From contig JBJNIA010186278.1 in NCBI GenBank assembly GCA_046118255.1, positions 1 to 35,504 of the forward strand: 35,504 bases of DNA, written 5' to 3'. A program made the position numbers and the translations under genes. Origin of the DNA: Sluysia triapertura. Its lineage: Eukaryota. Of the stretch, positions 4,082 to 21,769 are shown piece after piece (position 1 is the stretch's first letter; the number at the start of each line of letters is the position of its first letter). Below the pieces are notes generated by a model that was not told the origin of the DNA, did no database searches, and was given only the letters and a program-made list of their open reading frames with translations.

Positions 4082-4241
4082 TGTTAGACTTCGTAAAATG
4101 GACTGACCGGGGACCGAACCCGGGATCATCGTCTGCGCAGTCCGACTGCTCTGCCACTGAGCTATCAGCCCCGTCTAACAATTTCATTTTCAATATATTC
4201 AATTATACTACTTGGAACTTTTTAGGCCTATTATCCCAACA
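4082..4241 (-). mobile_element. 160-bp tRNA-containing interspersed repeat, copy 2 (tRNA-like unit at 4099-4171)
   Basis: Near-identical to 30-189 and in the same orientation. T-arm CCGGG-TTCGGTC-CCCGG, followed by a TTTT terminator. Confidence 0.85.
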
Positions 4242-18239: not shown

Positions 18240-19844
18240 GCTTATGATTCTTCTTTTAGTTGTTTCGCCTACTAAATAATAATAATAATAAATAAACAAT
18301 AACAATAATAATAATTGATAACACAAAGGATATGAATATAAAAATTGTTTACCTTAATGTTATAGTCCATTAAAATACTTACAATGTTTATGCTTACAAT
18401 TTTCAGGGAAAATTTTACATATCGTTACTTTATGTTTCCAGATTATTTCTCTCTGGTATTCTTTATAAAAGTAAAGTAACTTAATCATTGATAACAATAA
18501 GTTTCGAATAATTTTTTTATCATTAACAAAAAGTATATTAAGTTTAATTAAAACAATTTTATTATATACGACAAAAAGTTTGTTTTTAGGAAATAAGTCT
18601 TCTATTGACTGGAATTTGTCCTGTACTACACATTGTTGCATTGCACCGATCCTAAGTCTAAACATGTTATCTAAAATGTAAAATGTTATAAATTCAAAAT
18701 CAAATCTTACATACAATATCTGATTGTGAACAAACTTCCTAATAGACTTCCATGGCTTCATTGATAATCAGTAATGTAGATAGGTATCGGCCAGACAAAA
18801 ATAAATTAATTCTTATAACTCGTGATGTAATGGAACACTTTAATATATCTTTTTTATCTCTGCGGCTGACCATACAATTGACCTTCAACTAAGACTCTTC
18901 AATGAATTTTTTGATAAATTAAACAAATATATAAAATGACTCGAATCTAATAAAATTGACGAACTTACGAACTCGGCGTCGACATATGTGGTACTTAAGA
19001 GAGTTGATAATTCATTTCTTTCTCGTTCATAATGAATAATTGATTTCATGACTACAAATAATTTCTTTTCTAGCATTACGACTAAATTAACTTTTTCTTT
19101 ATGTAATGAACTATGTATAGTTGACGAAAGGTCTTTTAACGCGTTCAAAAGTTTCTGTTTAAGTTTTCCATTCATATAAACTAACATATTATTTTTTAGG
19201 AATTTACGAAATATTTTAGAAGAACAATCGTCTTTATACAAATTTTCGCCAAAATCATCAGAGGCATCAAAGTAATTTAATAAAAGGATTATAAACTTTT
19301 AAATAAAACGAAAAAGATTACTTCTAACAACGTCTGGTATTAAGCAATTTATAATTAAATCATTTGCGTTCATTCGTGTCAATGTTTAGGCATCTGTTTG
19401 TTGTAATTCATCATGAGAAGTAAGTGAAACTTTATAACTTCGATATACATAATATTGATTGTAGGCGATACATAGACTGTTATAAAAGTCTTTATTACTA
19501 TAGATTTCTAAGTCATCTTTAAATAGTTTTACGTTATCCAATTGATTGGTTAAGATTTCATAAGTTTGATCAATTTTCTGTTGAACTGGTTCATTTGTTA
19601 ACTTTTCTCGTTCTGGTTTAATCGATGAATTTTCATTACAGGATGGTGATATTAGATGTGCATCACTTCGTGTGGTATCTAAATCATGTTTCATCATTAT
19701 TAATTGTTAATTTCTGAAAAATGTATCCCGTAAGTATAAAAATAAGATCTACAATTTGATTATTGAAAAACGCTAACTTGTTATTTAATTTTGTAATTTT
19801 TTTGCTGCCAAAATATTGCTTCTATTTTTGCTATTTTTGATCAT
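18240..19844 (-). pseudogene. Orphan intron-containing pseudogene; main exon is a single 446-codon frame with six internal stops
   Basis: ORFs 19386-19697, 18885-19241 and 18360-18761 share one frame. Candidate short introns flank it at 19714-19777 and 18272-18352. Confidence 0.6.
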
Positions 19845-20265
19845 CCAATCGGGGCCTTTAAAAAGTGATATACATGAAAGTAGGTCTCGATTGGATGAAG
19901 TGTGCAATAATTATATTAAAAATTAATAACGAACATGACTGATGTTTGACCATCATCAGTGTTGGCACTTTAATGAAAAATATAACATGTAGTGTCAACA
20001 CTGGTGATGGTAGCGACCAGGTTGATCGTCATTAATTGAAAATTTTTATATTTTGATGAATTGATGATAATAATACTAATAACAATAATAATATTGCTAT
20101 CATTATTGAATCTTGTTTTTAATAAAAATCACACGAGTTTTTCTTTCGACTTCTTGTATTTCTTACATATATAAGATAAATGAAAAGTAAAAACTATTGA
20201 TATTATGTGAAGGAGCAACGGTAACGTGGTATGCTATGCTTAAGTTATCGTTGCTGCCTTCCACA
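19822..20265 (+). ncRNA. Cluster of pre-miRNA-like hairpins (three strong, two weaker)
   Basis: Strong stems: 19841-19857/19882-19898, 19949-19969/19991-20011 and 20206-20265. Weaker stems: 20062-20105 and 20136-20195. Non-Watson-Crick pairs in the strong cores are G.U on the plus strand. Confidence 0.55.
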
Positions 20266-21769
20266 AAAGAAATGAATTTTTTAAAACGATATTAAATTTA
20301 TTTTGAATTTTTGAAGATGAAAATGGCTTGAGCTGCAAGTGAAACAAAGAATGTTAGAATAAATTCTTGAGGTTTAAGGTTTATAATTAAAAACAAGATT
20401 TATGCTTTGAATATAATGGTTTGAAAGGCTTGTTAAAAGGTTATGGTTTATTAGGTTTGAAAGACAATTGCAAAATAAATCTTGGCGTATTTACCATGTT
20501 GTTGTAAAATGTGGATAATGATTATGTGTAAATGAAATGAGTTTGACTTAGTGTAATTGATTCGAGGTTGTAACATAATGTTTTCTGTTTCAGGTACTTG
20601 TTAATGTTGTTAACTGGTGTTAATGTATTTGTGATTTAATGTTACGTTGTGGTTGTGATTTGGTTTGGGAGGATGACTATTGAGTGAATGTTATGGATTA
20701 TTCGGTATTAATTATCAAAGTATAGTGTAAGGTGAATGAGTGTATTAAGCCAATTGTTTGAGATGTGTATGTTGGATTGTTATAAATGTCAAATATTGTT
20801 TATGATGAATCAGTTAATGTAATTCGATAGTATGAAATGTGATTGATTTAGATGTTATGCTTTTTGTGAACTAGTTGTAATTTGATAATGTTGAGTGTGA
20901 TTGTGATTTAAATGTAAGGTTTTAGTGAATCTTGGACTACGCGTGTTGACCACTACAATTTGTATTACGTGACCAATTTCTCCTTGTAGTTAAAATTAGA
21001 AGTGGTTCTAACATAGATATTTTCGGAACATTTAGGCCAATTTCATCTAATTTTTCTAATAATATTGATTTAGGCATAATTTGTTCATTCATTCATATAT
21101 ATTCAATTAATAATTTGTATTAGTTTGTGTTTGTGCTTCCTAAAATTTGTTTTCCATTTCGTATGTTTTCTTGCGATATTTTCCTTTAATCGATAGCTTT
21201 TTTCATTCTCTAATTAAGTTTGTAAAATTCTAATTTTTGTTTCCTGTATTCAATTTTGACACCATTCATTTCCAAAATTGAGCGCATTTTGAGATTTCCT
21301 TTTTAATTTCAGACTATTTCCTTGAAGCTATTGAGGTTACTAAGATATCTATCACAAATGATTAATAAAATAAAAAGTTTTAAAATCTTTTAGATTAAAA
21401 TATCTTATTGTTGCATGTTTATAATAAGTTTTAAGACATTAATAGTTTATTATATTGTTTTCAATTTATCTCATTTTAAATGATTTGGTTGTTTCTATCA
21501 TGAAAAATGAATAAATACAATTATTTTGATTTTATTTTAATATTCTTAAATTAAAATTTCAATTGATTATTTTATTACAGGGTTTAAGTCTTATTTCGAA
21601 TTTTTTAAAATTATTTATAATAATGAACATAATTTGAACAATATAAAAATATATTAAGTTATAAAATTTAATCAATAATAATTTCACCTTCTCTACATCT
21701 TAATGTACACGGTAGCATATTCATGTAATATCCGTTGCGGTCACGCTCAGATTCTATTTCATTATTCGG

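What the first reader, a model, noticed from the sequence alone, without database searches (positions are those of the whole stretch)
19822..20265. Compact array of unrelated ~60-nt hairpins with strand-specific G.U pairs: candidate undescribed polycistronic miRNA cluster
Seen in sequence: HP1 is TCATCCAATCGGGGCCT/AGGTCTCGATTGGATGA (17 bp, 2 G.U, 24-nt loop). HP2 is ACCATCATCAGTGTTGGCACT/AGTGTCAACACTGGTGATGGT (21 bp, 2 G.U, 21-nt loop, imperfect basal stem out to 19921/20037). HP5 is TGTGAAGGAGCAACGGTAAC/GTTATCGTTGCTGCCTTCCACA (1 G.U, two 1-nt bulges, 18-nt loop). Weaker hairpins lie at 20062-20105 and 20136-20195. The hairpins share no sequence, sit back to back, and the strong ones are GC-enriched over the background. 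All five substitutions in the three strong cores are G.U on the plus strand and would be A.C mismatches on the minus strand. Established knowledge: this geometry matches Drosha/Dicer substrates and animal miRNA polycistrons, whereas decaying DNA inverted repeats have no such strand bias. Inference: a lineage-specific small-RNA cluster, on the same strand as the downstream C1-RhoGAP gene and possibly intronic to it. I recognise no known miRNA family.
Basis: partly seen in the sequence, partly recalled or inferred. Interest (0 to 1): 0.8.

Follow-up and report, generated by a model that had tools for sequence, protein, structure and literature searches.

The report
Conserved hairpins inside a mobile repeat
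The hairpins are real and selection has kept their pairing, but they lie in the control region of a roughly 3-kb mobile repeat present hundreds to thousands of times in this genome, so they are parts of a transposon rather than a one-off microRNA gene cluster.

Summary
Observation confirmed. Three strong hairpins (HP1 19841-19898, HP2 19949-20011, HP5 20206-20265) fold far better than shuffled sequence. All five non-Watson-Crick pairs are G.U on the plus strand.

The miRNA-cluster reading is not supported. The whole stretch lies inside a ~3-kb dispersed repeat (window copy 18386-20960, left-truncated). One HP2 arm occurs 696 times in the genome. The repeat has TGTAG...CTACA ends, a fast-evolving orphan all-helical ORF on the minus strand, and a 640-nt C-poor conserved arm.

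HP1 is a twin inverted CCAAT-box module about 150 bp upstream of that ORF. The genome holds 4,433 such modules against 84 for the control pattern.

Across 42-49 copies about 94% of stem cells stay paired. Changes shared by several copies preserve pairing (transitions to transversions 38:8; G.U on plus 16 against 5 on minus). Changes private to one or two copies break it.

I read the hairpins as selected cis-acting stem-loops of a mobile element, probably folding in a plus-strand single-stranded form. No RNA data could be laid, so small-RNA processing is untested. Earlier notes of this scan describe the same kind of cassette on other DNA of this genome.

The parts
18386..20960 (.). One left-truncated copy of a ~3.0-kb interspersed repeat. 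Full-length example: L026:6003-9047.
   Evidence: Own-genome searches gave 5,866 and 5,505 first-look candidates, of which 40 each were scored at 66-92% identity. The right end is sharp and flanks are unrelated among 8 copies. The left boundary at 18386 is a truncation: other copies run ~370-400 nt further.
19841..19898 (+). HP1: a 17-bp hairpin that is also a twin inverted CCAAT-box module (CCAATC at 19845, GATTGG ending at 19894). It lies ~150 bp upstream of the minus-strand ORF start.
   Evidence: Across 49 copies, 93.9% of cells are paired and 7 of 16 pairs changed on both sides. The genome-wide pattern count is 4,433 against 84 for the control.
19921..20037 (+). HP2: a 21-bp core (19949-20011) with an imperfect basal stem. 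It is the best conserved hairpin, loop included.
   Evidence: Across 47 copies, 93.9% of cells are paired, and two G-C pairs become A-U in one subfamily. SCI is 0.81 on the plus strand against 0.62 on the minus strand. The 5' arm occurs 696 times in the genome.
20055..20112 (.). AT-rich microsatellite palindrome, (ATA)n then (TAT)n, of variable length.
   Evidence: Present in nearly all of 52 copies, with a median of 23 pairs and lengths of 54-138 nt. It gives no strand information.
20206..20265 (+). HP5: the conserved core is 20209-20225 paired with 20244-20260. The outer 4 pairs hold only in some copies.
   Evidence: Across 42 copies, 94.3% of cells are paired and 6 of 16 pairs changed on both sides. 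SCI is 0.77 on the plus strand against 0.49 on the minus strand.
20330..20960 (+). C-poor (G 147, C 39) terminal arm. It is the most conserved part of the element and ends in CACTACA.
   Evidence: Column conservation is about 0.84-0.96 (mostly at or above 0.9) across 13 copies from different subfamilies. GC skew is +0.58. There is no conserved fold, and the minus-strand RNA would be almost unstructured.
18360..19697 (-). Three open frames (19697-19386, 19241-18885, 18761-18360). They are decayed pieces of the element's single ORF, which is up to 501 codons in L030:5703-7205:+.
   Evidence: dN/dS is 0.3-0.6 between subfamilies and 0.8-0.94 between close copies. No Pfam family, no homologue, and one weak relative among 1.84 billion representatives.

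Best explanation
The stretch is the non-coding control region of one copy of an abundant, unclassified ~3-kb mobile element.

Read in the direction of the element's own gene (the window's minus strand), the order is:
1. A conserved terminal arm starting TGTAG.
2. HP5.
3. An AT-rich palindrome.
4. HP2.
5. HP1.
6. About 150 bp further on, the start of an orphan, all-helical ORF.

HP1 is the element's twin inverted CCAAT-box module. This promoter-like part recurs thousands of times in this genome. HP2 and HP5 are stem-loops specific to this family.

Shown: the hairpins are copied with the element. Their pairing has been kept in the lineages that went on copying and decays after insertion.

Inferred: they act as folded single-stranded signals (RNA or DNA) of the window's plus strand, that is, antisense to the ORF. 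The most plausible carrier is a transcript or intermediate that runs from the CCAAT module through HP2 and HP5 to the element's end, and serves the element's expression or mobilisation. They are not host miRNA genes.
For: Repeat nature:
- Dozens of scored copies at 76-92% identity over the 451-bp stretch.
- A 2.6-kb unit with a sharp right end and unrelated flanks.
- 696 genomic copies of the HP2 arm against 0 for the reversed control.

Element anatomy:
- Ends TGTAGTG...CACTACA. This is the TGTNR pattern reported for Gypsy LTRs and Ginger transposons (PMC2836005).
- The ORF is real. Open frames reach 345-501 codons in 27% G+C DNA, and dN/dS is 0.3-0.6 between subfamilies.

Selection on pairing:
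- 93.9%, 93.9% and 94.3% of cells are paired in 49, 47 and 42 copies. The slid controls give 22-72%.
- States shared by at least 4 copies: 62 Watson-Crick, 16 G.T on the plus strand, 5 A.C, 4 other mismatches.
- States private to at most 2 copies: 12 Watson-Crick, 15 G.T, 24 A.C, 69 mismatches. Fisher p = 0.007.
- Shared substitutions in stems are 38 transitions to 8 transversions, against 138:143 outside the stems. Private stem changes are 34:64.
- Background transitions are strand-symmetric.

Strand:
- Five pair positions hold G.T as the majority state across subfamilies and none holds A.C.
- Structure conservation index is 0.81 against 0.62 (HP2) and 0.77 against 0.49 (HP5) for plus against minus.

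HP1 as a promoter-like module:
- CCAATC-N30-46-GATTGG occurs 4,433 times against 84 for the control.
- Another such module lies ~165 bp upstream of an unrelated ORF in L027.
Against: - No RNA evidence at all.
- The plus-strand preference rests on modest numbers (16 against 5, p = 0.027). It could partly reflect the same pressure that strips C from the plus strand of the adjoining arm: the non-stem GC skew in the hairpin region is already +0.19.
- The ORF is on the other strand, so a plus-strand function needs a second, unproven transcript or a single-stranded DNA intermediate.
- HP1 differs so much between subfamilies, and its surroundings at 19706-19940 align so poorly, that its 'compensatory' changes may be whole-module swaps rather than stepwise changes.
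- No transposase or reverse transcriptase was found. Target-site duplications could not be resolved. The mobilisation mechanism is therefore unknown.
Confidence: 0.6

Rival explanations
1. Double-stranded DNA sites only. The palindromes are binding sites for dimeric or paired factors: twin CCAAT boxes for NF-Y-type factors in HP1, other factors at HP2 and HP5. Together they form the promoter and enhancer of the element's ORF, and nothing ever folds.
For: - The invariant core of HP1 is exactly CCAAT/ATTGG.
- The module is 50-fold enriched genome-wide with a fixed span.
- It sits ~150 bp upstream of the ORF start, here and in L027.
- HP2 is conserved in sequence, loop included.
Against: - Host factors do not co-evolve with each transposon subfamily. 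Yet shared stem changes are pair-preserving and almost all transitions: 38:8 against 138:143 outside the stems.
- G.T is kept as the majority state at five positions and A.C at none.
- The arms pair well beyond the CCAAT motif.
Confidence: 0.2
2. Small-RNA precursors carried by the element. A plus-strand transcript of many copies is cut by Drosha/Dicer-type enzymes into miRNA-like or endo-siRNA species.
For: - Hairpins lie back to back on one strand with plus-strand G.U pairs.
- HP2 with its basal stem reaches pri-miRNA size.
- Transposon-derived miRNA genes are known, for example mir-548 from Made1 (PMC1784062).
Against: - The stems of HP1 (17 bp) and HP5 (about 20 bp) are too short for canonical animal processing (established knowledge).
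- Near-perfect stems and hundreds of copies are typical of transposon repeats.
- No Rfam miRNA family comes near its threshold. The best is mir-H11 at 31 bits against a threshold of 70, a match of generic hairpin shape.
- No small-RNA data exist here.
Confidence: 0.12
3. No function. The palindromes are passengers, kept symmetric by youth of the copies or by template-switch (quasi-palindrome) mutation during replication.
For: Copies share descent, so many 'paired cells' are inherited rather than independent. The tool itself warns that shuffles overstate significance for related sequences.
Against: - Subfamilies whose ORFs have diverged to 31-56% amino-acid identity still keep all three stems.
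- Private changes break stems at the background rate, whereas shared ones do not.
- Template switching would erase the long-lived G.T pairs.
Confidence: 0.06

Closest known systems
Leader stem-loop arrays of retroviruses and LTR retrotransposons (packaging, dimerisation and primer-binding hairpins between the LTR and gag)
   Same: A run of unrelated stem-loops lies between a TG...CA-ended terminal arm and the first ORF. The stems are kept by compensatory change while the loops vary.
   Different: - No reverse transcriptase, integrase or gag homology.
- No second arm in direct orientation within 10 kb.
- No shared primer-binding flank.
- The wobble pairs favour the strand opposite to the ORF.
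Integrase-type ends: Gypsy LTRs and Ginger1/Ginger2 DNA transposons (PMC2836005)
   Same: The termini follow TGTNR...YNACA (TGTAG...CTACA).
   Different: - Ginger elements have 40-270-bp terminal inverted repeats, 4-bp duplications and an integrase-like transposase.
- Here the inverted ends are 7-12 nt, no duplication was resolved, and the ORF is an orphan helical protein.
Transposon-derived miRNA genes such as mir-548 from Made1 MITEs (PMC1784062)
   Same: Hairpins of pre-miRNA-like size are supplied by a mobile element in many copies.
   Different: - In those cases the hairpin is the whole palindromic MITE, and processing was shown by cloned small RNAs.
- Here the hairpins are internal, mostly shorter, conserved for the element itself, and without expression data.
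Paired CCAAT boxes of NF-Y-dependent promoters
   Same: HP1 carries two CCAAT boxes in inverted orientation about 45 bp apart, upstream of an ORF. The flanks match the usual CCAATCA/G form.
   Different: The arms are complementary for up to 17 nt, well beyond the factor's motif. The module is spread by repeats: 4,433 sites.
Strand-specific hairpins of rolling-circle and single-strand transposons (Helitron 3' hairpin; IS200/IS605 subterminal hairpins)
   Same: These are hairpins in mobile DNA whose function depends on one strand being single-stranded.
   Different: - Those hairpins lie within tens of bases of an end and go with HUH or Rep enzymes.
- Here they lie 700-1,100 nt from the end, and no such enzyme or Helitron-type terminus is present.

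Membership tests
Animal miRNA gene / polycistronic cluster | Hairpin with about three helical turns (~33-35 bp) of imperfect stem, suited to Drosha and Dicer | tested here: not met
   HP1 has 17 bp and unpaired flanks. HP5 has about 20 bp. Only HP2 with its basal stem reaches that size.
Animal miRNA gene / polycistronic cluster | Arm-specific ~22-nt reads with uniform 5' ends and 2-nt 3' overhangs | not testable with these tools
   One run of unknown kind was found.
Animal miRNA gene / polycistronic cluster | Match to a described miRNA family | tested here: not met
   Rfam gave nothing at gathering score. The best sub-threshold hit is 31 bits against 70.
Animal miRNA gene / polycistronic cluster | A discrete locus rather than a dispersed high-copy repeat | tested here: not met
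   (696 copies of one arm).
Interspersed mobile element | Many copies with defined ends and unrelated flanking DNA | tested here: met
   The right end is sharp in 8 copies with unrelated flanks. The left end of a young subfamily is sharp in 5-6 copies.
Interspersed mobile element | Target-site duplication | tested here: inconclusive
   Four complete copies are old, with blurred left ends. No more DNA could be fetched.
Interspersed mobile element | Encoded or identifiable mobilising enzyme | tested here: not met
   - The ORF has no Pfam family.
- No word-search homologue.
- No PDB relative.
- One weak ARM-like relative.
- The AlphaFold model is all-helical with pLDDT 57.
The element is likely non-autonomous.
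   The hairpins are internal, 700-1,100 nt from the nearer end of a ~3-kb unit.
LTR retrotransposon (unit as an LTR) | Two direct copies flanking an internal gag-pol region, with shared primer-binding or polypurine flanks | tested here: not met
   No second copy lies within 10 kb in L026 and others. The flanks beyond both ends are unrelated. Short contigs limit this test.
Ginger-type DNA transposon | TGTNR ends | tested here: met
   TGTAG...CTACA. The pattern definition is from PMC2836005.
Ginger-type DNA transposon | 40-270-bp terminal inverted repeats and an integrase-like transposase | tested here: not met
   Only 7-12 nt of inverted identity. No integrase domain.
Helitron | 5'-TC ... CTRR-3' ends with a hairpin 10-20 nt from the 3' end | tested here: not met
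   The ends read TGTAG and CTACA. There is no terminal hairpin.

The most novel reading that the evidence does not exclude
The twin CCAAT palindrome acts as a two-way promoter. On one side it drives the orphan ORF. On the other it drives a plus-strand non-coding RNA made of HP2, the AT palindrome, HP5 and the C-poor tail. That RNA is either cut into small RNAs or is itself the template or signal for copying. The element would then spread a ready-made, selection-maintained hairpin cassette through the genome. This would be a transposon-encoded polycistronic hairpin RNA, not a host miRNA locus.
Probability: 0.12. Interest if true: 0.7.

Novelty: new variant of a known kind. Interest (0 to 1): 0.35.

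Why it matters
It removes a false candidate for a new miRNA family. Any small-RNA mapping in this genome will pile multi-mapping reads on these arms, and they should be annotated as repeat-derived.

It also documents, with copy-level evidence, an abundant unclassified element type whose non-coding hairpins and terminal arm are under tighter constraint than its own gene. That points to a nucleic-acid signal as the core of its life cycle.

The split between shared changes (which preserve pairing) and private changes (which break it) is a simple way to tell functional transposon hairpins from decaying inverted repeats.

Tried and rejected
- **Rfam.** Only two tRNA-like hits elsewhere in the window. 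Sub-threshold miRNA hits reflect generic hairpin shape.
- **The ORF.**
  - Pfam found nothing.
  - The word search found nothing.
  - The ESM Atlas gave only weak ARM/HEAT-like leads.
  - The AlphaFold2 model has low confidence (pLDDT 57), so I ran no fold search.
  - The profile search of 1.84 billion representatives gave one hit at E = 2e-6, an intron-bearing host-type gene of another eukaryote.
- **Element class.**
  - No long terminal inverted repeats.
  - No second arm, so no LTR pair.
  - No clear target-site duplication.
  - The apparent 5' truncations turned out to be alignment breaks at the variable HP1 region and at the microsatellite palindrome, not truncations.
- **Viral link.** One exact 19-mer hit in a G+C-rich phage contig is chance: only 24 nt match.
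- **Mutational strand bias as the cause of the G.T excess.** Background transitions are symmetric. A compositional pull from the C-poor arm cannot be excluded.
- **The C1 domain of the neighbouring gene.** A regex scan of all six frames found none in a single exon. Only the RhoGAP exon is confirmed.
- **Bacterial promoter and terminator scan.** Uninformative here.

Full report
**The observation**

- HP1 arms are 19841-19857 and 19882-19898: 17 nt, two G.T pairs, 24-nt loop.
- HP2 arms are 19949-19969 and 19991-20011: 21 nt, two G.T pairs, 21-nt loop. An imperfect basal stem extends to 19921/20037.
- HP5 is 20206-20265, with one G.T pair and two bulges.

As RNA the plus strand folds at -29.2, -47.2 and -29.5 kcal/mol, with z-scores of -5.6, -7.7 and -6.2. 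No shuffle out of 200 does as well. The minus strand is weaker each time.

Stems are 47-59% G+C in a 22% background. Nothing comparable lies elsewhere in the window. Of the two weak hairpins, one is a variable (ATA)n/(TAT)n palindrome present in nearly all copies. The other is not conserved as a structure.

**It is a repeat**

The 451-bp stretch matches dozens of places in the window's own 619-Mb assembly at 76-92% identity, out of 2,282 first-look candidates.

Homology runs from 18386 to about 20960. The right end is sharp (...CACTACA) with unrelated flanks in eight copies. The left boundary in the window is a truncation, because other copies go on for another ~370-400 nt. A full unit is about 3.0 kb, for example L026:6003-9047.

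A young subfamily starts sharply with TGTAGTG. The ends therefore read TGTAG...CTACA. This is the TGTNR pattern reported for Gypsy LTRs and Ginger transposons (PMC2836005).

The left end carries three or four ~27-nt tandem units. One 19-nt arm of HP2 occurs 696 times in the genome with at most one mismatch; the reversed control occurs 0 times.

**What the element carries**

The minus strand holds the element's only gene.
- The window has three decayed frames: 19697-19386, 19241-18885 and 18761-18360.
- Other copies keep open frames of 310-501 codons. Such frames are vanishingly unlikely by chance at 27% G+C.
- dN/dS is 0.3-0.6 between subfamilies and 0.8-0.94 between close copies. This is the usual pattern for a transposon gene.

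The protein is all-helical in a low-confidence model. It has no Pfam family, no homologue by word search and no PDB relative. One weak relative turned up among 1.84 billion representatives, an intron-bearing ARM-like gene of another eukaryote. No transposase or reverse transcriptase was found, so the element looks non-autonomous.

The last 640 nt (20330-20960) are almost free of C on the plus strand (G 147, C 39). They are the best conserved part of the element, with column conservation about 0.84-0.96. That is better than the gene.

**The hairpins across copies**

I aligned 42-52 copies from at least three subfamilies.

All three stems are kept: 93.9%, 93.9% and 94.3% of cells form standard pairs. 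When the partner columns are slid, the figure is 22-72%.

HP1 shows three different inner stems in the three subfamilies, each self-complementary; 7 of 16 pairs changed on both sides. In one subfamily HP2 changes two G-C pairs to A-U and one U.G to U-A. HP5 shows six pairs with double changes and several wobble changes.

The sharpest test separates states shared by at least four copies, which arose in lineages that went on copying, from states private to one or two copies, which reflect decay after insertion.

| State | Shared by ≥4 copies | Private to ≤2 copies |
|---|---|---|
| Watson-Crick | 62 | 12 |
| G.T (plus-strand wobble) | 16 | 15 |
| A.C (minus-strand wobble) | 5 | 24 |
| Other mismatch | 4 | 69 |

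Fisher p = 0.007 for the G.T-to-A.C balance in shared against private states.

Substitution types tell the same story.

| Class of change | Transitions | Transversions |
|---|---|---|
| Shared, in stems | 38 | 8 |
| Shared, outside stems | 138 | 143 |
| Private, in stems | 34 | 64 |

This is the signature of selection for base pairing while the element replicates.

**Which strand folds**
- Five pair positions hold G.T as the majority state across subfamilies and none holds A.C.
- Shared wobble states favour the plus strand 16 to 5 (p = 0.027).
- The structure conservation index is higher on the plus strand: 0.81 against 0.62 for HP2 and 0.77 against 0.49 for HP5.
- Background transitions are strand-symmetric, so a simple mutational bias does not explain the excess.

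One caveat remains. The neighbouring arm is strongly depleted of C on the plus strand, and a weaker skew (+0.19) reaches into the hairpin region. The same pull could create some G.T pairs. I put the plus strand at roughly 70%.

**HP1 is a known kind of module in this genome**

Earlier notes of this scan on other DNA of the same genome describe the following:
- a hairpin plus twin inverted CCAAT boxes in front of intronless ORFs inside ~3-kb high-copy repeats (s1-463086, s1-463103, s1-468193, s1-474802);
- another hairpin trio judged transposon-borne (s1-463108).

I treated these as leads and tested the core claim.
- The invariant columns of HP1 are exactly CCAAT and ATTGG.
- The pattern CCAATC-N30-46-GATTGG occurs 4,433 times in the genome against 84 for the reversed control. 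In many families the arms pair beyond the motif through different letters.
- In the window the module ends about 150 bp upstream of the ORF's ATG at 19697. In L027 an unrelated module lies ~165 bp upstream of an unrelated 339-codon frame.

HP1 is therefore best read as the promoter-like module of the element's gene. The poor alignment of 19706-19940 between subfamilies also means that part of HP1's covariation may be module replacement rather than stepwise change. I could not confirm for this family the KDM1B origin that one note reports for a similar repeat.

**Reading**

The hairpin array is the control region of a mobile element, not a unique miRNA cluster.

My best account (0.6) is a set of cis-acting stem-loops kept by selection on the element. 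They probably fold in a single-stranded plus-strand form, RNA or DNA, that runs from the CCAAT module to the element's end.

The rivals are:
- double-stranded protein sites only (0.2), weakened by the transition and wobble pattern;
- small-RNA precursors carried by the element (0.12), weakened by short stems and untested for lack of RNA data;
- functionless palindromes (0.06), weakened by the contrast between shared and private changes.

**Limits**
- There are no expression data. I kept those places out of all later searches.
As a result, target-site duplications, the exact left terminus of old copies and any autonomous partner remain open.
- The copies share descent, so cell counts overstate independence. 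The split into shared and private states is my attempt to allow for that, but it is not a full tree-based test.
The neighbouring genes are SRP54 and a RhoGAP exon.

Noticed in passing
window:20330-20960: A 640-nt stretch almost free of C on the plus strand (G 147, C 39) is more conserved between subfamilies than the element's own gene. As minus-strand RNA it would be nearly unstructured (mean -2 to -6 kcal/mol per 120 nt). Its role is unexplained.
   Followed up: partly
genome-wide; example L027:412-456: Twin inverted CCAAT modules (CCAATC-N30-46-GATTGG) occur 4,433 times against 84 for the control. In many different families the arms pair beyond the motif. One lies ~165 bp upstream of an unrelated 339-codon frame in L027.
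   Followed up: partly
window:19939-19959: The 5' arm of HP2 can also pair with the 8 nt just upstream (CTGATGAT / ATCATCAG, 5-nt loop; 7 of 8 pairs in the window copy). This is a conserved alternative helix that excludes HP2. There is no covariation with which to test it.
   Followed up: partly
window:8732-10096 (-): Single-exon SRP54 gene: the SRP54 GTPase, N and M domains match at E = 1.8e-76, 5.8e-16 and 1.1e-23.
   Followed up: yes
window:24372-24956 (+): Fragment of a piggyBac-type transposase (PF13843, E = 1.8e-25).
   Followed up: yes
window:32147-32437 (+): RhoGAP-domain exon (PF00620, E = 6.7e-8). Whether the repeat is intronic to this gene was not settled.
   Followed up: partly
window:17174-17896 (-): Two open frames next to the truncated left edge of the repeat recall, from memory only, the C-terminal part of Tc1/mariner transposases. 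Pfam found nothing.
   Followed up: partly
window:12026-12577 and window:4242-4350: Another dispersed repeat is shared with L026, L032, L033 and L034 at varying distance and orientation from the hairpin element. It lies near the tRNA-Arg(GCG)-like units at 47-119 and 4099-4171.
   Followed up: no
window:21751-22411: This stretch also lies just to the right of another copy of the element in contig C22046 (3611-4376), at 83 nt instead of 790 nt from the element's end. It is either a second repeat or a longer form of the element.
   Followed up: no
L079 (GCA_030265305.1, JASAOG010000348.1): This locus encodes the only detectable relative of the element's ORF, a 370-aa intron-bearing helical-repeat protein of another eukaryote. 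It lies next to a TIR-domain gene.
   Followed up: partly
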